From positions 124,001 through 188,000 of IMG/VR virus record IMGVR_UViG_3300025121_000282: DNA of 64,000 bases; one strand, given 5' to 3'. Position 1 is the first letter of the stretch; each line of letters opens with the position of its first letter. This document shows positions 1,188 through 61,782 of the stretch, piece after piece. The notes under the pieces are model-generated. The model did not search any database and was not told the origin of the DNA. It saw only the letters and a program-made list of their open reading frames with translations. The position numbers and the translations under genes were made by a program.

Positions 1188-1212
1188 TTCGACCCGAGTC
1201 GTAGTCGGTTAA
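1188..1212 (-). promoter_or_regulatory. TTAAC-N17-GAA promoter-like motif
   Basis: Matches the recurrent motif; overlaps the stop codon of 1209..2042. Confidence 0.65.
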
Positions 1213-2042
1213 TCTGCCGATTTGTCAGTGGTACTGCTAAACATCTTCCTGGTTTCTTCCACACGCCATTCCTTAAAACCCGGAGCAAGAGCGTCGAGGT
1301 AGTCCTCAGCATTGACCTGTCTGGCGTTCCACCTAATGTTTTCCAAGACACGCGGTTCCAATTTCCACAGCAGTCTGACGTTCTCTTGGTTTTGACACCC
1401 CAACGAGGTTACCCAGTATTCTCTGTTCACACGTTTGACAGTAAACGGATAACTCTTGGTGGAAATTACTCGAATACCCGGGTCCCTGTTGGTGTTCCCG
1501 TGCCACAACGGGTTCTTATACTTACACCATCCGGGGATGCCGTAGCGGTTCCACCACAAAGACTTGGCAGGCTTGTAATCAAAGTCCGCCAAATCAAGTA
1601 CTTCTGGGTCTTTCGCTTCGTGACCTGGGAATCCCATTTTAAAGACCCCCAACAATTGGTCATTTTGGTTGTAGACCGAGTCCACGTAGTCCCATTCGTT
1701 GCAGTCATTGAAAATGATTACTCTCCACCCGTTTGAGGCTTTGTACTCGACATTGCCCGCAAATACGAATTGAGGTTCTGTGTCAGAAGTGAGGGTGATG
1801 TAACCAGTCTCAATGAGCTTGAAAAAATCCAGAATCTTAGATTTCATGACTTTTGTGTTTGTCCTATAACCACAAACAGGTAGGGAAGCGCGGTCATAAG
1901 TGGGAAAACCCTCACACTTGTGTACAACCTCATCACATTGCCAATCTGGTTCAGCCCTGCAGACCACACACCAACCATCTGGAGTACTGTGTGCCATTCT
2001 TGCCAGTGTTGCAGCAGAAGGCGAGGATAGGTTGTCACTCAT
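1209..2042 (-). CDS. hypothetical protein (277 aa)
   Basis: Long ORF within the minus-strand block. Confidence 0.7.
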   Translation of the reverse strand: MSDNLSSPSAATLARMAHSTPDGWCVVCRAEPDWQCDEVVHKCEGFPTYDRASLPVCGYRTNTKVMKSKILDFFKLIETGYITLTSDTEPQFVFAGNVEYKASNGWRVIIFNDCNEWDYVDSVYNQNDQLLGVFKMGFPGHEAKDPEVLDLADFDYKPAKSLWWNRYGIPGWCKYKNPLWHGNTNRDPGIRVISTKSYPFTVKRVNREYWVTSLGCQNQENVRLLWKLEPRVLENIRWNARQVNAEDYLDALAPGFKEWRVEETRKMFSSTTDKSAD

Positions 2043-2386
2043 GGCATCTCACTTTTCCTAATTATTTCCAGTATTTCAGTCTCACAAACTGCAAGTTCGC
2101 CTTGAATAAAATTGATCACACGAAATAAGCCAAATTCCTGAATGGCCGAAACAGGACCCCTGAGGTAGATGTCGCCCAATGGTTTTCTGTATGCAGTTAG
2201 CCTAATCGGTCTGAATGGCAGATACTTTAGCAGTGTTTCAACAGGTTCTGCGGTTAGAAACTTGTAGCCACCCTGGATGTATACCGCACTATAATTTTCG
2301 TTGGTTTGGTGGACTGCCTCGATGGTGTTGGATTGAGGAAAGACAACGCGGACACCGTAAATGGTTACAAAATTAAGTATAACTAT
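2039..2386 (-). CDS. hypothetical protein with non-canonical start (not in ORF track)
   Basis: 116-codon open frame exactly filling the gap; its TGA overlaps the next ATG; begins at ATA, or at GTG 2395 followed by in-frame TAG. Confidence 0.55.
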   Translation of the reverse strand: MVILNFVTIYGVRVVFPQSNTIEAVHQTNENYSAVYIQGGYKFLTAEPVETLLKYLPFRPIRLTAYRKPLGDIYLRGPVSAIQEFGLFRVINFIQGELAVCETEILEIIRKSEMP

Positions 2387-2568
2387 GGCCTACACTCTTT
2401 CAATTTGTTTTCAAGTTCTAGAACCTTAGACTCCATCTGTACATAATCGATTGACACTTTGGCCAAAAGAATGGGTACACTGCAAATAAGTGCGATACCT
2501 ATGACTACGAACACCCGGTCTATAGATCGTTCGCGTCGTGTACGGGGAAGAATGAGAGGTACGGACAT
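2383..2568 (-). CDS. small membrane protein
   Basis: One hydrophobic segment followed by a short coiled coil. Confidence 0.6.
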   Translation of the reverse strand: MSVPLILPRTRRERSIDRVFVVIGIALICSVPILLAKVSIDYVQMESKVLELENKLKECRP

Positions 2569-2577
2569 TGTGAGTAC

Positions 2578-2814
2578 TTACCGCTTAAGAAAGGCAACTG
2601 CCACTTTCCAACCTGGGGACAAGATCCGTCCGTCCTTGCTTGAAACCCACCCCTTTTCTCTGGCATAATTCTGGTATATCTCTTCTCCTGGACGGAGAGC
2701 AGGCACCTCAAAAGCGGGGGCTGTAAAAGTCATGACTTGATTACACCACTCAACCATGAGTTTACGGGTGTACTGGTCTTTGAATTCGTCTCTTGGTGTT
2801 GCATTTTCTGCCAT
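2578..2814 (-). CDS. hypothetical protein
   Basis: First ORF after the minus-strand promoter motif at 2848. Confidence 0.65.
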   Translation of the reverse strand: MAENATPRDEFKDQYTRKLMVEWCNQVMTFTAPAFEVPALRPGEEIYQNYAREKGWVSSKDGRILSPGWKVAVAFLKR

Positions 2815-2823
2815 ATGTCACCA

Positions 2824-2873
2824 TTCCCACTGTATTCGTACAGGTTAATTAACCTAGGCTCAGTTGATGTGAA
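2824..2873. promoter_or_regulatory. back-to-back divergent TTAAC-N17-GAA promoters centred on palindrome AGGTTAATTAACCT
   Basis: Minus copy starts at 2848 (GAA at 2826), plus copy at 2849 (GAA at 2871); coincides with the strand switch. Confidence 0.7.
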
Positions 2874-2883
2874 TCTGATTGCA

Positions 2884-3300: not shown

Positions 3301-3331
3301 ACGAACAGTGTTACATACTAAAGGAAGTACA

Positions 3332-3679
3332 ATGAACCCAATCGTTGATGAGATTCAGAAGCAATTTACCCAGCTGGGCCACACCTGGGTCAGTATGACT
3401 GTCAAAACTGAATCCAAAACTGAGCGTGCTACAATTCTGAGTTACCATAGGAACAACAACTGGTTCTGCACCTGGACTGCCTCAATGCGCGGTGGTGTTT
3501 TTCGAGGACTGGCTCACCCACACGACGGCCTGAACAACGTGGAAGGTCTGGAAGATTTTATCAGAAGGTGCCCCTCACACCACAAAATGATTCACAACCA
3601 GACCCGAGAGTTTAACAGGCTTCAATTCTTTATCACGGCCGACTACCTGACCAAGTGTGGCCTTGTTATAGTTGACTGA
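3332..3679 (+). CDS. hypothetical protein
   Basis: Promoter motif at 3281 and AAGGA SD. Confidence 0.65.
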   Translation: MNPIVDEIQKQFTQLGHTWVSMTVKTESKTERATILSYHRNNNWFCTWTASMRGGVFRGLAHPHDGLNNVEGLEDFIRRCPSHHKMIHNQTREFNRLQFFITADYLTKCGLVIVD

Positions 3680-4147
3680 GTGGCTCTTCGCGTGAAAAAT
3701 GACATGCAACATCAACTTACTGACCCCATCCAGGTACTAAAGTTCGTCACAGCGGGCAAGGCTACTTTTACCCTAAAATCAGTAAGTACGGGGGTCCACT
3801 ACACTTTTCAGGTCACCAAGGCTCCCCCGAAGCCTGATTTCCCCAATCGTACCCCCATTTACTTCGTGTCGGTACTGGTGGGACCGGATAACACGAAAAA
3901 TTACATGTACTTTGGTACCATTTCTGGGGCTTCAATGCTCTTCAAGATGGGGGCTAAGGCTAAAGTCATGGATGGGGCTAAATCGGTACAAGCCCTTATG
4001 TGGTTCTGGCGCAACCTCGTGGAATTTAGTGTGGTTCGTTCCGAGGTCAAGTTTTACCATGAGGGACGCTGCGCCCGTTGTGGGAAGAAACTCACAACGC
4101 CCGGATCGTTGGAACTTGGGTTTGGTCCCGAGTGCGCCAACAAATAA
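3680..4147 (+). CDS. DUF6011-like zinc-binding phage protein
   Basis: C-terminal CARCGKKLTTPGSLELGFGPEC. Confidence 0.7.
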   Translation: MALRVKNDMQHQLTDPIQVLKFVTAGKATFTLKSVSTGVHYTFQVTKAPPKPDFPNRTPIYFVSVLVGPDNTKNYMYFGTISGASMLFKMGAKAKVMDGAKSVQALMWFWRNLVEFSVVRSEVKFYHEGRCARCGKKLTTPGSLELGFGPECANK

Positions 4148-4220
4148 TTGACCACCACTCTCATAGTCTGAAGAACAATATAAGGGGTACAATCAAAAAT
4201 GGAACACTATCTTGACTCTG

Positions 4221-4478: not shown

Positions 4479-4498
4479 CTACCAGGAGGTTATCTACA

Positions 4499-5852: not shown

Positions 5853-5856
5853 ATTT

Positions 5857-6201: not shown

Positions 6202-6202
6202 G

Positions 6203-6397: not shown

Positions 6398-6417
6398 AGT
6401 AGTGGGGGTCCCACGTA

Positions 6418-7546: not shown

Positions 7547-7777
7547 GTGAAGGCAACACTAGAATTTGACCTAAGCGACCCCCAAGGCAAAGATGACTTG
7601 AACTGTGCCATATGTGGTCAAGACATACGAGCGGTAATTCTCAAAGTGCTGGAAAACCTAAGAAATAAACGCAAGCACGCTCAGCTTCCCAGGAATCAAA
7701 TCAAACTTATAGAAACACTGGAAACTGATGTAAGAGAATTGATCATGGACCACAAATTAACCGACCTGTTCTATTGA
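7547..7777 (+). CDS. hypothetical protein
   Basis: MKATLEFDL start; GAGG SD. Confidence 0.65.
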   Translation: MKATLEFDLSDPQGKDDLNCAICGQDIRAVILKVLENLRNKRKHAQLPRNQIKLIETLETDVRELIMDHKLTDLFY

Positions 7778-7828
7778 CCAATTATAAACAGAATAGAACT
7801 CCCCCATAACAGGAGGTGATTATAAACT

Positions 7829-8095: not shown

Positions 8096-8134
8096 GTTTG
8101 TATAGTTACCCACAACTTTCTAAGTGGGTAACTA

Positions 8135-13660: not shown

Positions 13661-14059
13661 ATACGGGGACAAATGCTGTGATGTGACCGTTGGGCGTTTG
13701 AAGCAAGAGTACGAATGCACTGGGTCCTGTAGGGACTATTGACTCTTGAACATACCTGTTCTGGCCCACAAGATCAAAAATTGCCGTAAACCAATCGTTC
13801 ACATGGTGGGTCCAAACAGGCCTGTCTTGTGTCGCATGTCCCGCCTTCCTGGTTCTAAATACCTCTCAGACGTAACTTGCAAAATCTGTCTGCGGATGGT
13901 GCACAGTCCTTACTACAACGTATATTGACCGCACCATGATAATGTAGAATGACTCTGCCGCAGTCACGTTGATTGCAATGTCAACGGGGTAACCAAATTT
14001 AAACTAAGGTGAACGGGGTGTAGACTGCACACCCCTAGTAACTTTACCCCTGTTTTAAT

Positions 14060-15409: not shown

Positions 15410-15877
15410 GTTGCAATCTGTAATTATTAATCTGTGGTGTTGTTCTCAGGACCCCACAGCAGAACCTTGTAAGCACACCCACTTCTGTCCGCTATGCTTT
15501 ATTGACGAAATCTGTGACTGCACCTGCTCGGTCACAGATGACCTTGGACTTTCAAAACACGGTCTACCTCGTGGGCACCACACTTTATGTGTGAATTGCT
15601 TAAATAGTATTACTTAGTACCCTACCTTATCTAGTACACCTACTACCAATCATTATCTCTTCAAACATAGTACTTGTGCACAGACAGCGTGTACTTATTA
15701 TTATGTTATGTCGCCCAGCACCAACCAGAACCACTTTCTAGAACCCACAAGAAGGCACACAATAGACCATTGACGGTGTATTAATGACACTGAAGAACCC
15801 CAGAAGAGAGAGTCGGTCAGGCAATCAGGCAGGATCGGCTCGGGGTTTTCAACTGGTTTTTAAGTGGAGATTGAAAA

Positions 15878-16744: not shown

Positions 16745-17233
16745 ATGTATAGTCGTTGCATGGATTACACAGACATACTAAAACAACAAGTAATAGAAGT
16801 GGCCTCTACAGTTTGCCCTAAACTGGATGACATTTCGTCAGACACATATACAGGTATCTGTTCTTATGACCTTAGGAAATTGCATGCCGTTCTTTCAGAT
16901 TTGACTGACTATCAGCAAAATGAATGGAATCTTCGTCCCATCCTAGAACTAACACATTGCAACATTTTTAAAATCTGGATTTCTGCTGCAGATTTTATCA
17001 TTGTGGGAAAACACTCACCTATTGAGTTAAATCCACTACCTAAAGCTGAAGAACCCTGGGCTTGGTTGACGTTGAACTCTGGTAGGACCATCTATTTCCA
17101 CATAAGTAGAAGAATCATGAGTGGTGCCTGCTACCTAGACCAAGAAAAGAGACTCCCCGAAAATCTAGACCTAAGTTTATTTCGTCTTTTGCCTTGGACT
17201 GAAAAATGTGAAAGACCAATTGCTTACATCTGA
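16745..17233 (+). CDS. hypothetical protein
   Basis: 162-aa ORF. Confidence 0.55.
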   Translation: MYSRCMDYTDILKQQVIEVASTVCPKLDDISSDTYTGICSYDLRKLHAVLSDLTDYQQNEWNLRPILELTHCNIFKIWISAADFIIVGKHSPIELNPLPKAEEPWAWLTLNSGRTIYFHISRRIMSGACYLDQEKRLPENLDLSLFRLLPWTEKCERPIAYI

Positions 17234-20102: not shown

Positions 20103-20448
20103 AGAGTGTGGACACCAGCTTACTGGTGCCATGGTGCTTGGTCTCGTCTATTGCAGAGATTGCCTCACATGCTTTACAACAGCCAAACTAGTAGCTGCCT
20201 CAGGCGGTTGGACACCCGGCCTCACCGTTAACATAGGAGACAAGTTGCTGACCATTGCAAATCGAATCGACCCCACTCCATATGCAATTGCTGCAGCAGC
20301 CAGCTTTGGGGTCACTCCTGAGGTCGTCCAAGCTATCAAAGCTGGGAAGCCGCACCCCACAACGCATCCCCTCGCTTCGCTTCCAATTAGGGCTGAGGGG
20401 CCAGCCAAGATTGATTACTCAGAGTGGTACGACACTGACGTTGATTGA
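20089..20448 (+). CDS. hypothetical protein with N-terminal zinc ribbon
   Basis: CKECG...CRDC. Confidence 0.55.
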   Translation: MGICKECGHQLTGAMVLGLVYCRDCLTCFTTAKLVAASGGWTPGLTVNIGDKLLTIANRIDPTPYAIAAAASFGVTPEVVQAIKAGKPHPTTHPLASLPIRAEGPAKIDYSEWYDTDVD

Positions 20449-20493
20449 CCCGCACTCTCTGTAGACGAAGAAGTGTGGAGGCTAACAACTACA

Positions 20494-21599: not shown

Positions 21600-22013
21600 T
21601 TGACAATGGCCCGTCCGTTGAAGGTCCTGGTGACCACCGCTCACTCCCTCCGTTGCCGAGTTGTTACACCGAATGGTGAATACGAAGTGCACCCGTCCCA
21701 CACTTTTGAAGTAACGGGCGACCACGACCCTGAGTCCTCGATTCACCACAGATACAAAGACTTTTTGAACAGACTAGAAGAACCTGACAACTTGAATCTG
21801 GCAGTGTGTATTCAGCTGACAGAAGAGGGTGTGCCTACGAGTCTGAATTGCTATAAGACAACCCGAGAACTTGGAATACTTCAGCTTGGGGCGTTTGGCA
21901 TCAAGCCGCACAACTATAGCTTAGATTTGCTGGATGATAGAGACTTGTTTGGGAACTTGTGTCGCGCCGTTGACAAAATAAAAGCAGCTATAAAGAAACA
22001 AAAATGGGATTAA
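21600..22013 (+). CDS. hypothetical protein
   Basis: Tiled ORF. Confidence 0.6.
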   Translation: MTMARPLKVLVTTAHSLRCRVVTPNGEYEVHPSHTFEVTGDHDPESSIHHRYKDFLNRLEEPDNLNLAVCIQLTEEGVPTSLNCYKTTRELGILQLGAFGIKPHNYSLDLLDDRDLFGNLCRAVDKIKAAIKKQKWD

Positions 22014-22060
22014 CTCCTACCCTGTCTAGGTGAATAGTTATAACAGGAGGACACACTATA

Positions 22061-26088: not shown

Positions 26089-26160
26089 GTTCTCCCTGAA
26101 ATAATCACTTATTTCAGTTGATTTTTAAGCCTGGGGGACTCTAAGCTCCCCAGGAGCCGT
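26089..26160 (-). ncRNA. 3' part of the putative omega/reRNA scaffold (5' boundary unknown)
   Basis: Hairpins at 26130-26154 and 26096-26117 (CTGAAATAA/TTATTTCAG) overlapping the tnpB 3' end and finishing in GAAC. Confidence 0.5.
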
Positions 26161-27200
26161 AAGGTTCTGGATCTGATGTTTGTGGCGCCGACGAAGTCGG
26201 CGTCTTGACCGTATCCGCAGGATACGCATCTAAATCTTTCGCCTTTACGGTTCTTTTCCGACTCCTTTAAACACTTTGGACAAATACGGGAAGTATAAGC
26301 AGCTAAAACAGGCACCACTAAAACACGGTTTTCTTGGGCCTTATGTTTTAAGCGCTCATGGACTCTGCGGACCGTCCAAGGAGCCATAGCTTTTCGGAAA
26401 CCTTTATTTCTTTTAGGGTTCTTCCCTTTCTTAATCCCTTTGAGGTCCTCTATTCCGAGAACTGAAATTTGATTCCATGGAATTTTGTTTAAAATTCTCC
26501 CAATATAATTTTCCCGTTCTTTCTGGGCTCTACGGAAACCATTAGAATCAGGAACACGTCTTCTGAGTTTATCTCTTATTTGACGGAATTCGGTACCTAA
26601 ATAAGTGGGCTTAGAACCATCAGACAAAGTAAGAAGTTTGATCACTCCTGAGTCAGCACCCACAGTGGTTTCAGGGTTTGGAACCTTGAGGTCTTGATCA
26701 GGTAAGTCAACCCACACAGCCAAAGAATTTTCAGAAATCTGAATTCCCTTCCCCATTTTAGCACCAGGGACAGCCAACCATTTATTAAGAACCCTTGTTC
26801 TTCTGGTCGGGATTATAATTCGCTCGCCTTTGGCGAGCGACGATAGTTTGATTACTAAATCGAATGACTTTTCACCATTTTCAATGCCCACAACCTTTGC
26901 ATCAAAAACACAATCACCAGTGAAATGAGGTAGACTAAAGCTTTGTCCCGTCTCCGCGGCTGCTTTGCAGCCGCTTGACAAGATCGACAGAGCCTGTCTA
27001 AGTGCTATCGATTTATAGCGTTCTGTGAGTCTCGTGTTTGTTAAACGAGCTAAGGTTTCTTTGTCCAAGCCTCCCGGCTCGGACCACAAGGATTTCAAAT
27101 AAAAGTTTACACCAGCCCGATAAGCTTGAAGAAGATTGGAAATCTTCTGCTTCTTTGAAGCAGTGATAAAATCCAAGCTTACTATGGCTGCTCGTCTCAT
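26109..27200 (-). CDS. tnpB: TnpB / Cas12f-like RNA-guided endonuclease
   Basis: RuvC-I VGADSG, RuvC-II IEDL, zinc ribbon YTSRICPKC..CVSC, RuvC-III DADFVGATNI. Confidence 0.9.
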   Translation of the reverse strand: MRRAAIVSLDFITASKKQKISNLLQAYRAGVNFYLKSLWSEPGGLDKETLARLTNTRLTERYKSIALRQALSILSSGCKAAAETGQSFSLPHFTGDCVFDAKVVGIENGEKSFDLVIKLSSLAKGERIIIPTRRTRVLNKWLAVPGAKMGKGIQISENSLAVWVDLPDQDLKVPNPETTVGADSGVIKLLTLSDGSKPTYLGTEFRQIRDKLRRRVPDSNGFRRAQKERENYIGRILNKIPWNQISVLGIEDLKGIKKGKNPKRNKGFRKAMAPWTVRRVHERLKHKAQENRVLVVPVLAAYTSRICPKCLKESEKNRKGERFRCVSCGYGQDADFVGATNIRSRTLRLLGSLESPRLKNQLK

Positions 27201-30219: not shown

Positions 30220-30264
30220 CCATCATTTTGTTCTTATGAATTATCGCAGAAGGAGATTATAACA

Positions 30265-32253: not shown

Positions 32254-32822
32254 ATGAACATTACTGTAACCCAAGGGAACATCGTTGACCACCCTGTAGA
32301 AGTCATCGTGAATGCTGCAAACTCTGACCTTCGGGTTGGAAGCGGGGTTTGTGCTGCCATTCATGCGGCAGCGGGTCCTGAACTTGAGGAATTGTGTAAC
32401 TTTGCTTTGAAGACTTGGGGTCGAACCCCTCCTGGCGAAGTTACGTTTACGCTTCCGGGTAATCTGAGTGCTCGGTTTGTATGCCATGCGGTTGCGCCCA
32501 TTTATCATCAGACCCCTGTTTCCATACGGGGGCCATGCTGATGTCGGTTTATACGCGCGCTATCGGAGACTCTGCCGGGTATCGTTGCAAGTCGATTGCA
32601 TTCCCAGCCTTGGGTACTGGGGTTTATGGTTGGCCCAAGCTTGAGGCTGCGAAGATCGCGGTGTCGGTTGCTCGCATGTACCAAGCCGCAGGCATGGACA
32701 TGGACATCGTATTTGTGGCATACGACGACGAGACCTTTGACATCTACAGTAGCCTGCTTGAATTGACCGACATGGGCAATTACAGGCCTCATCCCGAGGA
32801 TGTGGAACACGTCCCGGCCTGA
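32254..32822 (+). CDS. macrodomain ADP-ribose glycohydrolase (YmdB/MacroD-like), split by a 1-nt frameshift at G5 32528-32532
   Basis: GNI, IVNAANS.L..GSGVCAAIH.AAG and HAV.P in one frame; SIAFPALGTGVYGWP in the next. Confidence 0.8.
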
Positions 32823-42271: not shown

Positions 42272-42474
42272 ACGCGACAAAAATCCTCCAGGGGCTGAAT
42301 GACGAGATTGTGTCTGCTGAATTGCGGGTTGCCAAACTTAAGAACATTGAGTACTTGGTTTCCAGTCTTTTGAAGCTGGAGGGGTGGAACGAAGAACAGG
42401 AAGCCGATTGGATGGAACTCTGCAAAATAGCCGCAAACATCGGATATCCTCGACTGGAGAGACACGGGGATTGA
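42265..42474 (+). CDS. hypothetical protein
   Basis: Tiled ORF. Confidence 0.55.
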   Translation: MLDATKILQGLNDEIVSAELRVAKLKNIEYLVSSLLKLEGWNEEQEADWMELCKIAANIGYPRLERHGD

Positions 42475-42522
42475 CCGGGTTTGATTCCGTGTGAATTACC
42501 GCAGAAGGAGATCACTATTACA

Positions 42523-45335: not shown

Positions 45336-46029
45336 ATGGTAATTGTCATCGACCTGAGTACAGGCGAAGAAACACGGGAAGAGAATTGTGAAGTTGAGGT
45401 GGAACCAGTCCCTGTGACCCTTCTACCAATTTTTCCCGAATTAGGACTCCAGGTTGTAGAGGACTCACACTATAATGAAGAAATCTCTGATTAACTGGAC
45501 TCTGATCGGCCACGACCTCCCGTACTATATGACCGGGGATGCGCACCCGGACCTCGATTATGGAAATCCTCCAGCCGGCACCGGGAGGTGTAATCCGTGA
45601 AACGGCAGAAGAGTCACTGGCCAGAATTTTTTCTGGGGCTGACGACCTGCTGTGTAAAATGTTTCCAGGCTAATTGTCCGCGTTTTTTCCCTCAAATTTG
45701 GCTATAATCCTGTCCGCAGCTTCCACCATTGAGGCCCAAGTTACAGTTCCATCTGGCAGCGCCCCAAATGGACGGGAAGACTTGTGGTACTGAACCTCCC
45801 TGTTTCGATGGTTGGCTCTGTAAATAGACACAGCCTGCAAAATTACAGCCCTTGGAACATTGTAGTCTTTGGCCCATTGATCAAAATCACAGGGTCCAGG
45901 GACCCGCAGGCTGTCCTTTAGTCTTCTAAAAATCTTGCTAAATAGAAGTTTCTGCCTTTTAGAGTCCACAATTGACTCCACCAAATTTCGTGTGAAGTAC
46001 ACTATACAACACATTATAAGGTAATTACA

Positions 46030-47134: not shown

Positions 47135-47437
47135 ATGCGAATGCACAGACGTGTTGCTTGGAACATTACCACTTTTGACCCATTTGTGTACGTAGAGAGA
47201 CTTGACCGTTTTTTCCATCAGGACGACCTCCCTAACTTTCGTGGGTTAACGGCAGGAACCACCTGGGTCAGTTCTCACAGCCGTCTTTTCCGCACCAAAG
47301 CCAAGATGCTCAAATTTCTCAATTCCGATACCCGGTGTCCTGTTGGCGGAGCCGAGGGTTGGATCGTGATGAGGGTGACTTGGAGAGGCGGTCATGTCTG
47401 GACTGGCGAATACGCTGTCATGAAGAAGCCTAATTGA
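47135..47437 (+). CDS. hypothetical protein
   Basis: Tiled ORF. Confidence 0.55.
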   Translation: MRMHRRVAWNITTFDPFVYVERLDRFFHQDDLPNFRGLTAGTTWVSSHSRLFRTKAKMLKFLNSDTRCPVGGAEGWIVMRVTWRGGHVWTGEYAVMKKPN

Positions 47438-47494
47438 CTGTTTCCGCCGTTAGTTGAATAACTGTGTAACTATTATCCTGAGGAGAATCCTGAA

Positions 47495-48332: not shown

Positions 48333-48680
48333 ATGAGCCTTTATTGGTGTACCCGGCATGCTGCGCACCCTCCCGGTTCTGAGGGGTATGCTGACTCTTT
48401 CCTCCGACGAGAGGGAGTTCTGATTCAGGCGGGCTATGAGGAAGCGGCATTTGATGCTATGGAGAGCATGTACCCAAATGACTGCTTGGAATCGCCACTT
48501 AAACTCAGGTTTATGGTGTCACCATTCAAAAAATGGTACGAAGCATACCGGAAATGGGTCTCAGCAAACGGATGGTGTGCTAAGTGTACTCGTCCGTGGC
48601 AAGAAAGTATCTGCATCTGTGGGAATTTCCACAGAGTACCAGAGGGGCTCTTTTGTCTTACGGACGAAGACGTGGGTTGA
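48333..48680 (+). CDS. hypothetical protein with zinc-binding C-terminus
   Basis: CAKC...CIC. Confidence 0.55.
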   Translation: MSLYWCTRHAAHPPGSEGYADSFLRREGVLIQAGYEEAAFDAMESMYPNDCLESPLKLRFMVSPFKKWYEAYRKWVSANGWCAKCTRPWQESICICGNFHRVPEGLFCLTDEDVG

Positions 48681-48697
48681 CCCCACGTCTTCGTCCG
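48661..48697. repeat. perfect 16-bp inverted repeat whose loop is TTGAC
   Basis: CGGACGAAGACGTGGG-TTGAC-CCCACGTCTTCGTCCG. Confidence 0.9.
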
Positions 48698-48742
48698 GTG
48701 AAGAATCCTAGACATCAATCAACTATAAGGACATTATTCACA

Positions 48743-49095: not shown

Positions 49096-49440
49096 ATGGA
49101 AGTCACTGATGAGAGAAAAGTGTATGTTGTCCACCACAACATTGGTATGCCAGAGGCATACCCTGGTACTTACGTTGCTATGTGTCTGATCGAGGCCACA
49201 GCAATTCGACTTGCCAGGGGTAAGGGCCCTCAGGGTGCTAATGACGACATTTCCCACGCTTGCGCCAAACTGATTGATGGAACGTGGTACGCCCCGATCA
49301 CACTGCTGAAACCCACAGACGAGGACACAAGACATCAAAATCACAAAGACAGTGTGGCAGCAGTGATGGCTAAAGCCCGCGCAGCAGGCCTAACCAGCGA
49401 AGAAATCTCCCTCTTGAAGTCTGAAGGATTAACAAAATGA
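49096..49440 (+). CDS. hypothetical protein, distant paralog of 19647..20102
   Basis: VYVVH...A.RLARGKG..G...AGLTSEEI..L. Confidence 0.7.
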   Translation: MEVTDERKVYVVHHNIGMPEAYPGTYVAMCLIEATAIRLARGKGPQGANDDISHACAKLIDGTWYAPITLLKPTDEDTRHQNHKDSVAAVMAKARAAGLTSEEISLLKSEGLTK

Positions 49441-49718
49441 ACCTCGCCGAGAAGTATACTGGCAAGACGTTTGTTTTCCATTCCCCGTTCGAGTCGACTC
49501 CCGGCTGGAAGGATGGAGACAGGGGAGAACTTGTCCGACTGATTCCCGAAGGAACGGAGGGCGTGGAAGAGGGCGTTGGTGACCTGTGGATTGGTCGCAA
49601 TCTGGGCTCTGGTGAAGAACATCAGCTTTGGGGTGGAGAAGCCTTCACCGAAACTGGCGAACCTGTAATCTACGAGCACGCGTTCACAAACTGGAAACCG
49701 TCTACGTCGAGAAAGTAA
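49437..49718 (+). CDS. hypothetical protein
   Basis: ATGA overlap. Confidence 0.6.
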   Translation: MNLAEKYTGKTFVFHSPFESTPGWKDGDRGELVRLIPEGTEGVEEGVGDLWIGRNLGSGEEHQLWGGEAFTETGEPVIYEHAFTNWKPSTSRK

Positions 49719-54415: not shown

Positions 54416-54522
54416 GGTAGTTTTCTCCTTTGTTATAAATCGTACAAACTCATTAAAGCACAACCAGATTGACGCTGGTATACGTCAGGTGAAGAGTTAT
54501 AACAAAGGAGGGTTATAACAAA

Positions 54523-56221: not shown

Positions 56222-57745
56222 CTATTCCCACTCGATGGTGGCAGGTGGCTTGTGGGAAATGTCATAGACTACCCGACAGATGCCTGGAACCTCGTTGGTG
56301 ATTCTGGTCGAAATCTTGTCCAGGACGTCATAGCCCATCCTGGACCAGTTGGCGGTCATCCCGTCTAAAGAGTCGCAAATTCTGACGACAACAGTGTCAC
56401 CATAGGTCCGCTCGTCCCCCACTACTCCTACCGATTTTACTGGTGCATACACAGCAAAATACTGCCAAAATTTCTTACTGGCATTGGTGGAGTACTCAGC
56501 CTCAACTACTTCAGAAACTATGTGGTTTGCTTTACGTGCAGCTGAGACCCGCTGCGGCGTAACCTCCCCTACAATTCTTATGGCCAAACCCGGGCCGGGA
56601 AAAGGCTGTCTCCAGAGCATCTTGTCGGGGATGCCGAGTTCTTTCCCCAACTCTCGGACCTCGTCCTTGAACATGAACCTAAGCGGCTCACACACCTTTA
56701 AACCAAGTTCTTTGGGTAAACCCCCCACGTTGTGATGACTCTTGATCACACTGGATGGGCCCTTGGTTGACATACTTTCGATAACATCGGGGTATAAAGT
56801 CCCCTGGGCTAAGAAGTCAAACTTCTCCCTACCCACTGCTGTCATGAATGCATTAATAAACTCGCGCCCAATAATCTTGCGTTTGGTTTCGGGGTCGGTT
56901 ACCCCCCTCAATGCATATAGGAATTGTTCTGAGGCGTCGTAGCACTTCACCCCAATCCCGTACCCGTCAAACATGTTCATGGTGTCTTCTACTTCTTCTT
57001 GCCTGAGAAGACCAGTATCCACAAACACACAAGTCAACCTGTCACCTATGGCATCATGAAGGAGTTTGGCAACTACGGTTGAATCCACACCTCCGGAAAC
57101 ACCACAGAGCACCTTGCTTGTGGGGCCAAGCTGTTCCTGAAGCTCTATCTGGATATTTGATAGTATGGTGTACGAGTTTTTCCTTAACGGAATCCCAGCA
57201 ATTTTTAAAAAGTTGGATAGTATTTTCCCACCAATTGCTGTATGGGAGACTTCTGGGTGAAACTGGACACCATAAAAATGAGCGTCGTCATTTGAGATAG
57301 CAGCAAATAGACCAGATTCTGACAGAGCATCAACTCTGAAACCGTGCGGTACTTGGTCCACTGAAACACCGTGGGACACCCACACTTCGAATTCGCCTTC
57401 AATGCCCCCCAATAATTTTGATTTCTGGAGTGCCTTAATAGAGGCCCGCCCGTACTCACCGTCACCCGTGGTACAAACAGACCCGCCCAAAGCAGTGGTT
57501 AAAAGCTGCATACCATAACAGATTCCAAGTATAGGCGCACCAAAATTTAGAATGCACGGATCTAGCGTAGGTGCTCCAGAGTCGGTGACGACAGCAGGGC
57601 CACCACTCAAGATTATCGCACTTGGGAACAAATCGTCAGTTACTTTATCCCATGGTAAAATTTTGTTTGCAGCACCCATCTCCAGTAGTCTTCTGGAGAT
57701 AAGTTGGGTGTACTGGCTGCCGTAGTCTACTATCAAAATTTCCAT
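56222..57745 (-). CDS. guaA: GMP synthase (glutamine-hydrolysing)
   Basis: DYGSQYTQLI, GICYGMQ, QFHPEV, SGGVDS, QGTLYPDVIES, KSHHNVGGLP, PFPGPGL, KPPATIEWE. Confidence 0.97.
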   Translation of the reverse strand: MEILIVDYGSQYTQLISRRLLEMGAANKILPWDKVTDDLFPSAIILSGGPAVVTDSGAPTLDPCILNFGAPILGICYGMQLLTTALGGSVCTTGDGEYGRASIKALQKSKLLGGIEGEFEVWVSHGVSVDQVPHGFRVDALSESGLFAAISNDDAHFYGVQFHPEVSHTAIGGKILSNFLKIAGIPLRKNSYTILSNIQIELQEQLGPTSKVLCGVSGGVDSTVVAKLLHDAIGDRLTCVFVDTGLLRQEEVEDTMNMFDGYGIGVKCYDASEQFLYALRGVTDPETKRKIIGREFINAFMTAVGREKFDFLAQGTLYPDVIESMSTKGPSSVIKSHHNVGGLPKELGLKVCEPLRFMFKDEVRELGKELGIPDKMLWRQPFPGPGLAIRIVGEVTPQRVSAARKANHIVSEVVEAEYSTNASKKFWQYFAVYAPVKSVGVVGDERTYGDTVVVRICDSLDGMTANWSRMGYDVLDKISTRITNEVPGICRVVYDISHKPPATIEWE

Positions 57746-57752
57746 TTTGTAA

Positions 57753-58859
57753 TTAGCCCTTGTAATTTGTGGTGGGTGTAACAGAAAGCATGTCGTGGAC
57801 GTGAGATTCAGACCTACCAGCTTGGGTTACGGTTGTGAACCGCATCCCACCTCTTAGCCGATTGATAGTTTTAGCGCCCACGTATCCCATGCCCGATTTG
57901 AGCCCACCAACTAACTGAAATAATACTTGAGAAACAGGACCCGTGTATGGGACCAACCCCTCTACACCTTCCGGGACCAGTTTGTCTTGGGCTACCCCGT
58001 CTTGAGAGTACCGGTCGCTGCTACCACTTTCCATAGCACCCACGGAACCCATACCTCTGTATTTCTTATAGTATTTTCCGTCATTAATACCTATTACTCT
58101 CTCTCCAGGGGCCTCGTCGCATCCAGCCAAAATGTTGCCAATCATGACAGCATGAGCACCTGCTGCTATGGCTTTGGTTATGTCTCCGGAGTACCGGATT
58201 CCACCATCAGCTATAATTGACAACCCATCTTCGGAGTCACAGACCGTGGCACAGTCAGAAATAGCCTGAAGTTGTGGAACCCCCGCACCAGAAACCACCC
58301 GGGTGGTACAGATGGAACCGCCACCTATGCCCACTTTCACTACATTTGCGCCAGCTTTATAGAGTCTGTAGGTGCCGTTTGCGTCTGTCACGTTACCGGC
58401 TATAATGGTAATGTCGGCGTCCAGTCCCCTCACATACTCCACCATTGAAACCACATTTTTGCTATTTCCGTGGGCGGAATCTATGACTATGGCGTCGGTT
58501 CTGGCCTCTACGAGTGCCCTGGCTCTAAATCTATTTGGCAAAGAGACACCGATAGCAGCTGCAGTTCTAGTGCCCCATTCTTCTCTGCTTTCTTTGATAG
58601 TGGTACACTGCTTTTCTATGGACATGTTTTTATGTAGTACACCCAAACCGCCACATTTCCACATTTCTCTCAGCATAGCTTCGTCCGTAACAGTGTCCAT
58701 AGCTGAACTTAAAATAGGTATAGACAGTCTTATGCTTCCGATGGTTGTGCCAGTGTCCGCTTCGTTTGGTGTGAATTCGGCATATGCAGGACACAAAAGA
58801 ACGTCATCGTAGGTGAGCCCGTGTGTGCGCTCTAACTCAAATCGGGTAAAATTCTTCAT
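57753..58859 (-). CDS. guaB: IMP dehydrogenase lacking the CBS/Bateman domain
   Basis: LTYDDVLL.P, SSAMDTVT, DSAHG, GIGGGSICTTR, IADGGI, YRGMGS, DRY flap, PEGVEG; only 368 aa. Confidence 0.93.
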   Translation of the reverse strand: MKNFTRFELERTHGLTYDDVLLCPAYAEFTPNEADTGTTIGSIRLSIPILSSAMDTVTDEAMLREMWKCGGLGVLHKNMSIEKQCTTIKESREEWGTRTAAAIGVSLPNRFRARALVEARTDAIVIDSAHGNSKNVVSMVEYVRGLDADITIIAGNVTDANGTYRLYKAGANVVKVGIGGGSICTTRVVSGAGVPQLQAISDCATVCDSEDGLSIIADGGIRYSGDITKAIAAGAHAVMIGNILAGCDEAPGERVIGINDGKYYKKYRGMGSVGAMESGSSDRYSQDGVAQDKLVPEGVEGLVPYTGPVSQVLFQLVGGLKSGMGYVGAKTINRLRGGMRFTTVTQAGRSESHVHDMLSVTPTTNYKG

Positions 58860-58969
58860 TTTGTGTGAGCACCTTTCGACATAGGGTTACCGATTATACA
58901 AACTATTATTAACATAGGGGAAAGGAAGACGAACTATAAGGACACAATCCTTACGGAAAGACTCTTGGT

Positions 58970-59218: not shown

Positions 59219-59225
59219 CACCAAA

Positions 59226-59566: not shown

Positions 59567-59573
59567 AGTGGCA

Positions 59574-59780
59574 ATGCCTGTTCAAACTTGTGATAACTGT
59601 GGCGAAGAAACCAGGGTGATTGACTCCAGACATGGCGAGCATTTCATCCGTCGTCGTCGAGAGTGTATGGCTTGCAAAGTTAGGTTCTCTACCGTAGAAA
59701 TTACTGAGAAAGAGTATAACAGGTTGACGCGGGACTCTGATTTCGTAAAATCAGTCAAAGAGTTTTTCAAGGGGCTGTAA
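59574..59780 (+). CDS. NrdR-like zinc-ribbon protein lacking the ATP-cone
   Basis: CDNCG..TRVIDSR.....IRRRREC..C..RFSTVE. Confidence 0.8.
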   Translation: MPVQTCDNCGEETRVIDSRHGEHFIRRRRECMACKVRFSTVEITEKEYNRLTRDSDFVKSVKEFFKGL

Positions 59781-60059
59781 GTGGACCCAACACTTGAGGT
59801 CGCACGCAAGCTTACGTTTCGGCGACTAAAACCCACCTGCCCCAAAGTGCGGGAGTGTGAGGATGTTCTGTTGGGTGCCATGGCCCAATTGGAAACAAGA
59901 GTAAACAACTCTCCCGACAGGGAAAATCTTATTAATGGGTTTGTTGCAATAAAAACTGCTGTGTACGATTTCTTCTTATTAAACGATGAAATAAGAAATA
60001 AACTCCGCAATGAGTGGGTAGAACACATAGCTGAGTTGATTGACAACCACAATCTATAA
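59781..60059 (+). CDS. hypothetical protein
   Basis: Tiled ORF. Confidence 0.55.
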   Translation: MDPTLEVARKLTFRRLKPTCPKVRECEDVLLGAMAQLETRVNNSPDRENLINGFVAIKTAVYDFFLLNDEIRNKLRNEWVEHIAELIDNHNL

Positions 60060-60071
60060 CTGAATAGTTAT

Positions 60072-60313
60072 ATGAACACTATCAACATTCTCCCAGATGC
60101 CGGCTTTTTCACCCACTCGCGTTTCAGGCTGCCGAAATCATCGGTAAGCCCGAGTACTTGATGCACCCCGCCTGCATTGCGGGCTACCGCGATTATATGA
60201 AGGGCGATTTTGAGGCCATGTTTCACCGACTTGCCATTGACATGGACAAGTGGGGTGAAACCGATGAGGGCCGCAAATTGAACAGTCTCATCTTTCAGTA
60301 TAACGAGGAGTAA
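60072..60313 (+). pseudogene. hypothetical gene apparently frameshifted at T5 60105-60109
   Basis: Adding one T gives a continuous ~80-aa ORF filling the gap. Confidence 0.5.
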
Positions 60314-60318
60314 ATAGA

Positions 60319-61368
60319 GTGGAAAATCTGCCTAATTGTACTTGTGGTGCTTTCTCTTGGGTGGGCGGTGGTGGGTCGTTTGGTCCCAGCTACGCGTTCA
60401 CGCCCCGAGAATGTACAGAATGTGGCGCTCGTCTCCACCGTGTCGACCGTGACGGCTGGTGGTTGGCCCTGATTGTCCAGCCCACAGTCAGCGATGAAAC
60501 TTTCGAGACGTATGCAAACAGTGTTCTGACCATTCAGGCCCGGGTTTACAAGAAAGGGTGGGAAGCGGCTGTAAACGCCGAAGAGGACATCAGGTACAAC
60601 AACCTCGTGGCCTCGTGGGGACTGAACCCTTCGAAAGGCTGTAAGTACACCCCTCGAAAACTTCTGGACGAAAACGGGACCCAGATCGGGTGGGTGGAAG
60701 AGGAAGAAACCCACACCTATCCCGACAGGGAGCCTTACACCTACAAAACCATTGTGTACGATTTCCTCGACCACAATGGAAACAAGATCGAAATCGATAC
60801 CAAAGCCTTCCGCAAGGCCTGGATTGAGATGTTGGATGCCCATCCCCGAAACCCCGGGATCGTCCGAGCGCCGGACCCTATCAATCTTCCTGAGGGGATT
60901 ACGGCTTACGTGCTTCGAAACCAGATTTGGGAGAAAACTCCTCCGCAGGCTGAAGTGTTGCCGTTGCCAAACGACCCCCTCCGTATGGGGTGGGAAGATT
61001 ACTTTGGTAAGGTCTTTGATGCAGTTTGGGCGGCAACTGGCGTGGCCTGCAACCTCACGGAAACCCCGAACCAGTACTATACAGACCGAACTCAGTCCGA
61101 GCCGTGGTACCGCTTTGAGGTTGCAGGCTCCAAATTTACGGTTGGGCCTAGGAAGCGGGTTATTTCGCTTGAGGTCAACTTCCCAAGGTCTTGCAAGGTC
61201 GTTGCAATCCGGGATCTGGCTCTGCGGGACAACACCACCTACGAGGCCAATGCGGCATGGAAAAATGAAACCGAGGTTGCAGATAGCGTTTTGGTCCATG
61301 CCTGGACGCAGGATAAGCTGATCGAGTACCTCACCATTCTGGTCCGAATCGCAACTGAACAGAATTGA
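60319..61368 (+). CDS. hypothetical protein (349 aa)
   Basis: GAGGAG SD; N-terminal CTC...CTEC. Confidence 0.75.
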   Translation: MENLPNCTCGAFSWVGGGGSFGPSYAFTPRECTECGARLHRVDRDGWWLALIVQPTVSDETFETYANSVLTIQARVYKKGWEAAVNAEEDIRYNNLVASWGLNPSKGCKYTPRKLLDENGTQIGWVEEEETHTYPDREPYTYKTIVYDFLDHNGNKIEIDTKAFRKAWIEMLDAHPRNPGIVRAPDPINLPEGITAYVLRNQIWEKTPPQAEVLPLPNDPLRMGWEDYFGKVFDAVWAATGVACNLTETPNQYYTDRTQSEPWYRFEVAGSKFTVGPRKRVISLEVNFPRSCKVVAIRDLALRDNTTYEANAAWKNETEVADSVLVHAWTQDKLIEYLTILVRIATEQN

Positions 61369-61386
61369 CCATTCTGGGGGTCTTGT

Positions 61387-61737
61387 ATGAATGGGAGGTC
61401 TTACGCGAATGTGAACTCAGAGATTTTGCTGCGGGGGCCTGCGCAGTTTGACATGTGTGGCCAATTTCTCGGGTACCCTCTACAAGTGACTGCAGAAAAA
61501 GTATCTCCCGGGTTGGTCAAGAGGTTGGTGAAGTACGCTGTCAACCAGATGGTTGATCACGGTTTTCCGTGTTTTGGAAAAGTACGTGTTTATACCATGG
61601 ATGGCGACGAGCGACCAGCAGACCGAGACTACTGTGTCGAGTTTATCAATAGTAAGGGAAATGGTTTGGGTGTTCAGAGAATTCTCATGAAGAATGGACA
61701 CCCGTTTTTGGACCATGGATTCTATGTCATTAACTGA
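61387..61737 (+). CDS. hypothetical protein
   Basis: Tiled ORF. Confidence 0.55.
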   Translation: MNGRSYANVNSEILLRGPAQFDMCGQFLGYPLQVTAEKVSPGLVKRLVKYAVNQMVDHGFPCFGKVRVYTMDGDERPADRDYCVEFINSKGNGLGVQRILMKNGHPFLDHGFYVIN

Positions 61738-61782
61738 GACTGGTCTGGGCAGAAGTACGCTACAATCTGTAAGGGAGTCTAC

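What the first reader, a model, noticed from the sequence alone, without database searches (positions are those of the whole stretch)
1188..61754. About 30 copies of a non-canonical promoter, TT(G/A)AC-N17-GAA
I counted 31 copies with exact 17-nt spacing. All lie at gene boundaries and are oriented with the downstream genes, including two on the minus strand. A uniform-composition estimate gives roughly 4 by chance on both strands. The -35 looks like sigma70 (TTGAC), but the -10 region reads G-AANNN(T/C) rather than TATAAT. Inference: an early promoter class read by a divergent host sigma, or by a phage-encoded or phage-modified polymerase; it may also indicate the host lineage.
Basis: partly seen in the sequence, partly recalled or inferred. 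Interest (0 to 1): 0.6.

Follow-up and report, generated by a model that had tools for sequence, protein, structure and literature searches.

The report
Jumbo-phage promoter class with unusual -10
The repeated TTGAC-N17-GAA motif is real: it is a promoter class of about 100 copies driving the small-gene block of an uncultured 315-kb groundwater phage, but which sigma factor reads its unusual downstream GAA element could not be settled.

Summary
TT(G/A)AC-N17-GAA occurs 42 times in the window against 5.6 expected.

The window is bases 124001-188000 of a 314,886-bp groundwater jumbo phage. Genome-wide, 84 strong sites are found against about 1 expected. They concentrate on the + strand of a 100-kb block of small accessory genes.

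The full consensus is gATTGACc-N16-GAA(G/T)aA(T/C)nnY-A. The spacer is 17 nt, tolerating 16 or 18.

- Eight sites (seven ATG, one GTG) have a start codon exactly 8 nt after GAA, with no Shine-Dalgarno sequence.
- Shine-Dalgarno motifs never start upstream of that point.
- I therefore infer the transcription start there, which puts GAA at -10 to -8 and TTGAC at -32 to -28.

This geometry is about 3 bp more compact than a canonical sigma70 promoter. Canonical TTGACA/TATAAT promoters are not enriched.

The phage has no detectable RNA polymerase and no complete sigma factor. It has only a sigma-region-4 plus winged-helix protein, and 30 related jumbo phages with that protein family lack the motif.

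The most likely reading is early promoters read by host RNA polymerase with a sigma70-family factor. Which sigma is unresolved, and no RNA data exist.

The parts
1188..1212 (-). class-1 promoter (TTAAC..GAA), moderate score; predicted TSS 1180; drives the 308-aa gene starting at 1142
   Evidence: 14.9 bits, at a gene boundary
2824..2848 (-). class-1 promoter, one half of a back-to-back divergent pair; ATG of the 78-aa gene at 2814, 2 nt after the predicted TSS
   Evidence: 14.2 bits
2849..2873 (+). class-1 promoter, the other half of the divergent pair; opens the + strand block
   Evidence: 14.3 bits
3281..3305 (+). class-1 promoter, moderate score; start codon at 3332
   Evidence: 13.9 bits
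3672..3696 (+). class-1 promoter with a leaderless gene: ATG at 3704 coincides with the predicted TSS; 147 aa
   Evidence: 20.1 bits; ATG at +32
4148..4172 (+). class-1 promoter; predicted TSS 4180
   Evidence: 25.2 bits
6672..6696 (+). variant class-1 promoter (TTAAC-N17-TAATAAC); start codon at 6729
   Evidence: 15.3 bits, found by the matrix only
7774..7798 (+). class-1 promoter, moderate score; start codon at 7829
   Evidence: 14.5 bits
11501..11525 (+). class-1 promoter with a leaderless gene: ATG at 11533; 197 aa
   Evidence: 22.6 bits; ATG at +32
13925..13949 (+). class-1 promoter; no ORF start within 130 nt, so a long leader or an unannotated product
   Evidence: 17.6 bits, in an intergenic stretch
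15770..15794 (+). class-1 promoter; start codon at 15878
   Evidence: 18.2 bits
17236..17260 (+). class-1 promoter with a leaderless gene: ATG at 17268; 82 aa
   Evidence: 18.0 bits; ATG at +32
20445..20469 (+). class-1 promoter; start codon at 20494
   Evidence: 25.3 bits; the start agrees with an independent gene call in L026
21138..21162 (+). possible class-1 promoter, weak; start codon at 21241
   Evidence: 13.5 bits; lies within a doubtful 58-aa ORF
22010..22034 (+). class-1 promoter; start codon at 22061
   Evidence: 25.5 bits
22888..22912 (+). class-1 promoter followed by about 400 nt with no called gene, upstream of the GmrSD-like gene
   Evidence: 18.8 bits
25332..25356 (+). class-1 promoter with a leaderless gene: ATG at 25364; 145 aa
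   Evidence: 16.1 bits; the same start was called independently in L026
27590..27614 (+). class-1 promoter; the Shine-Dalgarno motif AGGAGG begins exactly at the predicted TSS 27622
   Evidence: 29.5 bits
29654..29678 (+). class-1 promoter of the GTTTCCATGT subclass; start codon at 29708
   Evidence: 32.7 bits
30216..30240 (+). class-1 promoter; start codon at 30265
   Evidence: 26.7 bits
37122..37146 (+). class-1 promoter; start codon at 37171
   Evidence: 22.8 bits
37767..37791 (+). class-1 promoter; 89-aa gene starts at 37831
   Evidence: 21.5 bits; gene call from L026
40115..40139 (+). class-1 promoter of the T4 Rnl1-like RNA ligase gene (start codon at 40179)
   Evidence: 18.9 bits; Pfam RNA_lig_T4_1
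42471..42495 (+). class-1 promoter, the best score in the window; start codon at 42523
   Evidence: 33.4 bits
44827..44851 (+). possible variant promoter (TTAAC-N17-GTA), weak
   Evidence: 13.9 bits, found by the matrix only
45972..45996 (+). class-1 promoter; start codon at 46030
   Evidence: 26.1 bits; the overlapping minus-strand ORF call is probably spurious
47434..47458 (+). class-1 promoter; start codon at 47495
   Evidence: 26.2 bits
48677..48702 (+). class-1 promoter with an 18-nt spacer, missed by the N17 pattern; the -35 box sits in the loop of a 15-bp inverted repeat (48661-48697); start codon at 48743
   Evidence: two-block score 22.8; sequence read directly
49429..49453 (+). possible class-1 promoter, weak
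   Evidence: 14.7 bits
50400..50424 (+). class-1 promoter; start codon at 50472
   Evidence: 25.2 bits
51885..51909 (+). class-1 promoter; start codon at 51936
   Evidence: 24.8 bits
54469..54493 (+). class-1 promoter; start codon at 54523
   Evidence: 24.1 bits
55009..55033 (+). class-1 promoter of the GTTTCCATGT subclass; start codon at 55057
   Evidence: 32.1 bits
55557..55581 (+). class-1 promoter, moderate score; start codon at 55613
   Evidence: 13.7 bits
56946..56970 (-). high-scoring match inside the guaA-like gene on the same strand: an internal promoter or a chance match
   Evidence: 19.9 bits, inside 56222-57745
60040..60064 (+). class-1 promoter; the ATG at +32 opens only a short ORF, so the target is uncertain
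   Evidence: 21.0 bits
61730..61754 (+). class-1 promoter; start codon at 61783
   Evidence: 22.6 bits

Best explanation
These are bacterial-type, two-block promoters. They drive about 35 transcription units in the window and about 100-120 across the genome, in the small-gene accessory block of a 315-kb jumbo phage.

A sigma70-family factor on the host's multisubunit RNA polymerase binds the upstream block gATTGACc through its region 4. The downstream block GAA(G/T)aA(T/C) acts as the melting (-10-like) element and fixes the start at the conserved Y-A dinucleotide 8 nt after GAA.

Because the phage shows no polymerase and no complete sigma factor of its own, the sigma is most likely host-encoded. 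That would make these early promoters usable on injected DNA.

Shown: the motif, its spacing, its orientation, and its position relative to genes. Inferred: the start site, from leaderless ATGs and Shine-Dalgarno positions.
For: - **Enrichment.** 42 matches against 5.6 expected in the window. Genome-wide, 84 sites of at least 16 bits against about 1 expected, with 73 of them on the + strand.
- **Position.** 32 of 42 pattern matches lie at gene boundaries (p = 1.3e-9). 51 of the 84 strong sites have a same-strand start codon within 120 nt, against 9% expected by chance.
- **Spacer.** 17 nt in 75 sites, 18 nt in 16 and 16 nt in 7.
- **The start follows GAA, not TTGAC.** In the 18-nt variants, the spacer sub-motif, the ccc|AGA start context and one leaderless ATG all keep their distance from GAA.
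- **Start site.** ATG occurs 9 times at +32, 7 of them opening ORFs of at least 60 aa, and no other position between +25 and +45 has more than one such ATG. Shine-Dalgarno 4-mers begin only from +31-33 onward. +31 is a pyrimidine in 87% of sites and +32 a purine in 88%.
- **tRNA.** A tRNA-Leu gene starts 5 nt after a predicted start site.
- **5' ends.** The first 45 nt of the predicted transcripts are less structured than random windows (-5.3 versus -8.2 kcal/mol).
- **No competing signal.** Neither canonical sigma70 promoters nor intrinsic terminators are enriched.
- **No phage polymerase or complete sigma found.** No RNAP beta subunit, T7-like RNAP or sigma region 2 was detected.
- **Gene content.** The downstream genes are of accessory or counter-defence type: Macro, NADAR, GmrSD-like, an acetyltransferase and an RNA ligase.
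Against: - No transcript data exist, so no start site has been measured.
- The geometry does not fit a primary sigma. Measured from the -35 block with a 17-nt spacer, the -10 hexamer would be AAkAAy, but the start would then be only the 4th base after it. Measured from the start site, the hexamer would be gtGAAk, which lacks the essential A at -11 and leaves a spacer of only 14 nt.
- A second motif, TGTATA(A/G)T, with canonical leaderless spacing, suggests that the polymerase in use can read an ordinary TATAAT. GAA may therefore need a different sigma.
- Very divergent phage sigmas of the gp55 type, or a cryptic polymerase among the unannotated 2191-aa and 1457-aa proteins, cannot be excluded.
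- The host is unknown.
Confidence: 0.6

Rival explanations
1. These are middle-type promoters read by host core polymerase carrying a phage-encoded sigma too divergent to detect. It could be a split sigma, in which the conserved sigma-region-4 plus winged-helix protein supplies -35 recognition and an unrecognised sigma2-like protein reads GAA.
For: - Both blocks are nearly invariant (20.9 bits in total), and the GAA element is non-canonical.
- The compact geometry (TTGAC at -32 to -28) is closer to alternative-sigma arrangements such as ECF AAC-N16/17-CGT, or B. subtilis sigmaH AGGA...GAAT. These two consensus sequences are from my own knowledge and were not verified here.
- The phage encodes a true sigma4 fold (Z 9-10 against ECF sigma4 domains), next to a NusG-like gene.
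- A TATAAT-like second promoter class exists that an unmodified host enzyme could read first.
Against: - No sigma region 2 was found with PF04542, TIGR02937 or phrog_351.
- 30 jumbo phages carrying the same sigma4-like family show no enrichment of the motif: 0-11 hits each, against 66 in this genome.
- The TGTATAAT class also precedes structural genes, which fits late rather than very early expression.
- The motif sits in a block that looks like an early region.
Confidence: 0.22
2. The sites are read by host primary sigma together with a phage-encoded cofactor, analogous to sigma appropriation in T4 middle promoters. The box centred at -30, or the GAA block, would then be the cofactor's site rather than a sigma site.
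For: - Measured from the inferred start site, TTGAC is centred at about -30, where the T4 MotA box lies (from my own knowledge).
- The 3-bp compression relative to canonical promoters.
- A sub-class carries an extra conserved spacer element, GTTTCCATGT, forming an imperfect TTC-N5-GAA dyad that could be an operator.
Against: - TTGAC is exactly the sigma70 -35 core, and the 17 +/- 1 nt spacer is typical of a single sigma spanning both blocks.
- No MotA or AsiA-like protein was identified, although this was not searched specifically.
- Early genes would then depend on a protein that has to be made or injected first.
Confidence: 0.1
3. The sites are not promoters. They would be a repeated protein-binding or recombination site, or a remnant of duplicated intergenic cassettes.
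For: - Several copies share long stretches of the spacer (the GTTTCCATGT subclass), as duplicated cassettes would.
- There is no direct expression evidence.
Against: - The flanks and most spacers are unrelated; only the two blocks are conserved.
- The sites show strict strand bias following gene orientation, a fixed distance to leaderless ATGs and a lower bound on Shine-Dalgarno positions.
- The two blocks are neither a palindrome nor a direct repeat.
- Strain variants about 1% diverged show no change within any site, though this test has very low power.
Confidence: 0.05

Closest known systems
Sigma70-dependent early promoters of large lytic phages (T4 early, T5, lambda PL/PR; from my own knowledge)
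   Same: There are many strong, near-consensus copies in front of clusters of small early or host-takeover genes. The architecture is two blocks with a TTGAC -35 core and a 17 +/- 1 nt spacer, read by host polymerase with no phage polymerase involved.
   Different: The downstream block is GAA(G/T)aA(T/C), not TATAAT. The inferred start is 8 nt after GAA, so the whole promoter is about 3 bp more compact. An A immediately 5' of TTGAC is conserved in 85% of sites. Canonical TTGACA/TATAAT pairs are not enriched in this genome.
Alternative-sigma promoters: ECF group 4 (AAC-N16/17-CGT) and B. subtilis sigmaH (-10 GAAT). Both consensus sequences are from my own knowledge; a literature search found no citable match
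   Same: Both blocks carry high information, the spacing is strict, the distance between the -35 core and the key -10 base is about 18 nt, and the -10 element contains GAA(T), as in sigmaH.
   Different: The -35 block is TTGAC rather than AAC or AGGA. No cognate sigma gene is visible in the phage. About 100 copies in front of phage accessory genes is not what a stress regulon looks like.
Promoters of jumbo phages with their own multisubunit polymerases (phiKZ, AR9, 201phi2-1; papers listed but not read in detail)
   Same: These are also jumbo phages with dozens of repeated phage-specific promoter motifs in front of early gene clusters.
   Different: From my own knowledge, those promoters are single AT-rich blocks read by phage-encoded polymerases. 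This genome has no detectable RNAP beta-like or T7-like gene, and its motif has two blocks with a sigma-type spacer.
T4 middle promoters (MotA box at -30 plus a sigma70 -10 element; from my own knowledge)
   Same: The upstream element is centred near -30 rather than -35.
   Different: The sequence is TTGAC, not the MotA box, and the -10 element is not TAnnnT. No MotA/AsiA pair was identified.

Membership tests
sigma70-family two-block promoter (general) | Two conserved blocks separated by a spacer of fixed length, tolerating +/- 1 nt | tested here: met
   17 nt in 75 sites, 18 nt in 16, 16 nt in 7, and other spacings at background level
sigma70-family two-block promoter (general) | Located upstream of genes and co-oriented with them | tested here: met
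   32 of 42 pattern matches at gene boundaries (p = 1.3e-9). 73 of 84 strong sites lie on the + strand within a + strand gene block. Start codons fall at +46 to +77, or exactly at +32
sigma70-family two-block promoter (general) | Transcripts start a fixed short distance downstream of the -10 block | not testable with these tools
   No RNA run holds this phage. The start at GAA+8 is inferred from leaderless ATGs and Shine-Dalgarno positions
canonical primary-sigma (group 1) promoter | A -35 hexamer resembling TTGACA | tested here: met
   T, T, G/A, A, C are 99%, 98%, 76/24%, 99% and 100% conserved; the next base is C in 52% of sites
canonical primary-sigma (group 1) promoter | A -10 hexamer resembling TATAAT, with A at -11 and T at -7, placed so that the start is the 6th-9th base downstream | tested here: not met
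   With a 17-nt spacer the hexamer is AAkAAy, but the inferred start is then only the 4th base after it. Counting back from the start site, the hexamer is gtGAAk, which has no A at -11. Canonical pairs are not enriched
ECF (group 4) sigma promoter | A -35 element containing AAC and a -10 element containing CGT or GTC | tested here: not met
   The blocks are TTGAC and GAA. Only the spacing and compactness resemble ECF promoters
ECF (group 4) sigma promoter | A cognate sigma with sigma2 and sigma4 domains is encoded | tested here: not met
   The phage has only a sigma4 plus winged-helix protein and no sigma2 domain. The host genome is unknown
phage-polymerase promoter (T7-like, N4-like or phiKZ-like) | The phage encodes its own RNA polymerase | tested here: not met
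   No hit for PF00562 or PF00940, although the PF00940 control search also found nothing, so that result is weak. The giant virion-module proteins have no hit in PHROGs, Pfam or PDB sequences
phage-polymerase promoter (T7-like, N4-like or phiKZ-like) | A single contiguous motif overlapping the start site, or a hairpin promoter | tested here: not met
   The motif has two blocks with an almost uninformative 16-nt gap (2.6 bits). Hairpins are not enriched around the sites (p = 0.86)

The most novel reading that the evidence does not exclude
The motif reports a previously undescribed sigma specificity. It would belong either to the primary sigma of an uncultured groundwater bacterial lineage or to a cryptic phage sigma with no recognisable region 2. 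This sigma would pair a classical TTGAC -35 contact with a GAA-type melting element and start transcription about 3 bp closer to the promoter than any characterised sigma70-family holoenzyme. The roughly 100 sites would then form a ready-made specificity logo that could be used to identify the host or the factor.
Probability: 0.3. Interest if true: 0.7.

Novelty: new variant of a known kind. Interest (0 to 1): 0.5.

Why it matters
Huge phages from metagenomes have no cultured hosts and almost no functional annotation. A promoter class of 100 or more copies with a sharply defined logo helps in three ways.

1. It partitions a 315-kb genome into transcription units and temporal modules without any expression data.
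2. It shows that leaderless mRNAs are used.
3. It gives a sequence signature that can be searched for upstream of housekeeping genes in candidate host genomes, or tested against candidate sigma factors.

If the non-canonical GAA element and the compact geometry hold up, they would extend the known range of promoter recognition by sigma70-family factors.

Tried and rejected
- **Direct start-site evidence.** The only public runs that hold the phage are groundwater and soil DNA metagenomes, none RNA.
- **Relatives by single proteins.** RNA ligase, terminase and DNA polymerase found nothing in the viral collection.
- **Relatives by promoter sub-motif.** The viral collection gave 0 hits. In the metagenome collection, only copies of the same phage (99-100% identical) carry several sites, and the single hits elsewhere look like chance.
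- **Strain variants about 1% diverged.** There were 0 changes in 650 motif and spacer positions against 15 in 1725 flanking positions. Only about 5 of those changes are independent events, so the test has no power.
- **Host clues.**
  - The TnpB-like gene has no relative in the genome collection.
  - The guaB-like gene's only hit is a Bdellovibrionales MAG at 56% identity.
  - That MAG has 22 pattern hits against 8 in the control, in 3.4 Mb.
  - Its two sub-motif look-alikes lie inside coding sequence, so the lead was dropped.
- **The sigma4-like protein as the determinant.** 30 related jumbo phages that carry the family lack the motif.
- **A genome with 2-aminoadenine (Z base) replacing adenine, altering -10 recognition.** A PurA/PurZ-like gene with an intein, PurB, guaA and guaB are present, but no MazG-like or HD enzyme is. 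The simpler reading is ordinary AMP and GMP synthesis from IMP.
- **Hairpin (N4-type) promoters or terminator overlap.** There is no excess of secondary structure around the sites.
- **Rfam.** No RNA family was found in the window.
- **Literature.** No described TTGAC-N17-GAA consensus was found.
- **Structure prediction.** Folding the sigma4-like protein from a single sequence failed (pLDDT 37). Folding with an alignment succeeded.

Full report
**Where the window lies.** The window is bases 124001-188000 of a 314,886-bp virus record rated complete, with 47% G+C. Public runs that hold it are groundwater and soil DNA metagenomes from five studies, and none is RNA. The phage collection contains no close relative.

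The genome is laid out as follows:
- Replication and packaging genes lie on the + strand at 0-60 kb.
- Mixed small genes and seven tRNA genes lie on the - strand at 60-124 kb.
- About 200 small + strand genes lie at 124-222 kb. The window is in this block.
- Structural genes lie on the - strand at 234-315 kb.

Window genes with a recognisable family include a T4 Rnl1-like RNA ligase, guaA- and guaB-like genes, a TnpB-like gene, a GmrSD-like gene, an SDR, Macro, NADAR and an acetyltransferase. This is the content of an accessory or host-takeover region.

- TTRAC-N17-GAA matches 42 times against 5.6 +/- 2.6 expected.
- Genome-wide there are 98 forward and 26 reverse matches, and 82 of the forward ones fall in 120-220 kb. 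The count peaks sharply at N17: 98, against 4-29 for other spacings.
- Anchoring on ATTGAC alone still recovers G, A, A at 63%, 66% and 82%.
- A matrix refined by iteration finds 84 sites of at least 16 bits against about 1 expected, and 104 sites of at least 13 bits against 5.6 expected.
- In the window, 32 of the 42 pattern matches lie at gene boundaries where 30.5% is expected (p = 1.3e-9). The 10 matches inside genes are close to the chance expectation.
- An independent gene call on an identical contig (L026) agrees with my start codons wherever the two overlap.

**Anatomy of the motif.** The consensus is g-A-TTGAC-c, then 16 weakly informative bases (T-rich in the middle, ending in r-g-g-t), then GAA-(G/T)-a-A-(T/C)-n-n-Y-A. 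Total information is 20.9 bits: 10.0 in the upstream block, 2.6 in the spacer, 6.3 in GAA through +28, and 2.0 around the start.

The spacer is 17 nt in 75 + strand sites, 18 nt in 16 and 16 nt in 7. At least eleven of the strongest sites share the spacer ending GTTTCCATGT directly before GAA. In the 18-nt variants this element stays attached to GAA. One 18-nt site lies in the window, at 48677-48702.

**Where transcription probably starts.**
- Among the 104 sites, ATG occurs 9 times at position +32, counted from the first T of TTGAC (8 nt after GAA). Seven of these open ORFs of 82-197 aa that have no Shine-Dalgarno-led alternative start.
- No other position between +25 and +45 has more than one such ATG.
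- An 18-nt-spacer site repeats the pattern at the same distance from GAA rather than from TTGAC.
- Shine-Dalgarno 4-mers begin only from +31 to +33 onward. At window 27590 the AGGAGG motif starts exactly at +32.
- +31 is a pyrimidine in 87% of sites and +32 a purine in 88%.
- A tRNA-Leu gene begins 5 nt after one predicted start.
- The first 45 nt of the predicted transcripts are less structured than random windows of the block.

I therefore infer leaderless mRNAs and a start at +32. This places GAA at -10 to -8 and TTGAC at -32 to -28. It is an inference, not a measurement.

**Why the promoter is non-canonical.** Measured from the -35 block with a 17-nt spacer, the -10 hexamer would be AAkAAy. 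That shares four of six bases with TATAAT, including A at -11 and a pyrimidine at -7, but the start would then be only the fourth base after the hexamer. Measured back from the start site, the hexamer would be gtGAAk, which has no A at -11 and leaves a spacer of only 14 nt. The two ways of measuring disagree by 3 bp.

By contrast, a second motif, TGTATA(A/G)T, behaves canonically. It has 23 copies, and 15 of them lie within 50 nt upstream of a same-strand start where about 0.9 would be expected. Its leaderless-type ATGs sit 5-8 nt after the hexamer, which is canonical spacing, and it has no -35 partner. Pairs of canonical TTGACA-N16-18-TATAAT, and intrinsic terminators, are at chance level.

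**Who reads it?**
- No RNAP beta-like or T7-like polymerase gene was detected. The T7-family control search also found nothing, so that negative result is weak.
- The unannotated giant proteins of the structural module have no hit in PHROGs, Pfam or PDB sequences.
- No sigma region 2 was found with PF04542, TIGR02937 or phrog_351.
- The only sigma-related gene lies at genome 18849-19526, next to a NusG-like gene and a clamp-loader gene.
  - With a 55-sequence alignment it folds confidently (pLDDT 88).
  - Residues 43-108 form a sigma region-4 domain (Z 9-10 against ECF sigma4 domains).
  - Residues 113-207 resemble a winged helix (Z 6-7).
  - There is no sigma2 domain.
- This protein's family has 326 representatives and at least 229 loci on viral contigs of up to 620 kb. 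Thirty such jumbo-phage records carry 0-11 copies of ATTGAC-N17-GAA each, similar to controls, against 66 in this genome. The family is therefore unlikely to determine the motif on its own.

**Verdict.** That this is a promoter class is well supported; I put it at about 0.9. The most economical reader is host polymerase with a host sigma70-family factor, which would make these early promoters. The non-canonical -10 element and the compressed geometry keep a cryptic phage sigma, or a cofactor, as live alternatives.

Noticed in passing
window 8099-8106 (+), 16746-16753 (+), 58893-58900 (-, upstream of the guaB-like gene); 23 copies genome-wide: A second promoter-like motif, TGTATA(A/G)T, has no -35 partner. 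15 of its 23 copies lie within 50 nt upstream of a same-strand start codon, where about 0.9 would be expected. They occur in the replication, structural and accessory modules. Several precede apparent leaderless genes, with the ATG 5-8 nt after the motif.
   Followed up: partly
window 3704, 11533, 17268, 25364; genome 87826(-), 210287, 212968, 304936(-): Apparent leaderless genes: the ATG coincides with the predicted transcription start and there is no Shine-Dalgarno sequence. This suggests a host that translates leaderless mRNAs efficiently.
   Followed up: partly
window 29654, 42471, 55009; genome 189566-211030 (at least 11 sites): A promoter sub-class shares the spacer ending GTTTCCATGT directly before GAA, forming an imperfect TTC-N5-GAA dyad. 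It could be an extended -10-proximal contact or an operator.
   Followed up: partly
window 48661-48697: A perfect 15-bp inverted repeat whose 7-nt loop is the -35 box GTTGACC of an 18-nt-spacer promoter. A few other sites (genome 204439, 211929) have similar hairpins, but there is no general enrichment.
   Followed up: partly
window 26109-27200 (-): A TnpB / Cas12f-like (IS605 OrfB-type) gene inside the phage's accessory block. It is present in all strain variants and has no relative in the genome collection.
   Followed up: partly
window 56222-58859 (-); genome 286256-288679 (-) and 229168-230436 (+): The phage carries both purine branches from IMP: guaB- and guaA-like genes in the window, plus an adenylosuccinate-synthetase-like gene interrupted by an intein with a LAGLIDADG endonuclease, and an adenylosuccinate lyase. 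No MazG-like or HD partner was found, so a diaminopurine genome is not supported.
   Followed up: yes
genome 284600-284674 (-): A tRNA with anticodon CUA (amber suppressor type). TAG is the rarest stop codon (72 of 471 called genes), but long ORFs read normally under the standard code, so there is no sign of global recoding.
   Followed up: partly
genome 18328-19526 (+) (L007:824-2022): A NusG-like gene followed by a sigma-region-4 plus winged-helix gene. The latter belongs to a family conserved in at least 229 viral contigs, many of 100-620 kb. It is a candidate hallmark transcription factor of a jumbo-phage clade, and its function is unknown.
   Followed up: partly
early-block 5' leaders, e.g. 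window 7815-7828, 30255-30262, 54512-54519: TTATAA / ATTATA occurs within 20 nt upstream of the start codon in 15 of 182 early-block genes, against 2 of 267 elsewhere. It usually lies between the Shine-Dalgarno sequence and the ATG.
   Followed up: partly
window 32254-32822 (+): The Macro-domain gene is split into 95-aa and 93-aa ORFs in the window's strain, but is a single 189-aa ORF in strain variants that are 99% identical (L025, L027, L031).
   Followed up: no
genome 111532-113064 (-): A phage-encoded PAS-HisKA-HATPase sensor histidine kinase.
   Followed up: no
genome about 309250-309330 (-), upstream of the 894-aa gene at 306563-309247: At least five tandem copies of a 14-nt unit (CCTCACATCTAATT) lie immediately upstream of a large structural-module gene.
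   Followed up: no
genome 24999-28199 (+): The large terminase gene is unusually long (1066 aa), and the terminase similarity is confined to residues 541-1015.
   Followed up: no
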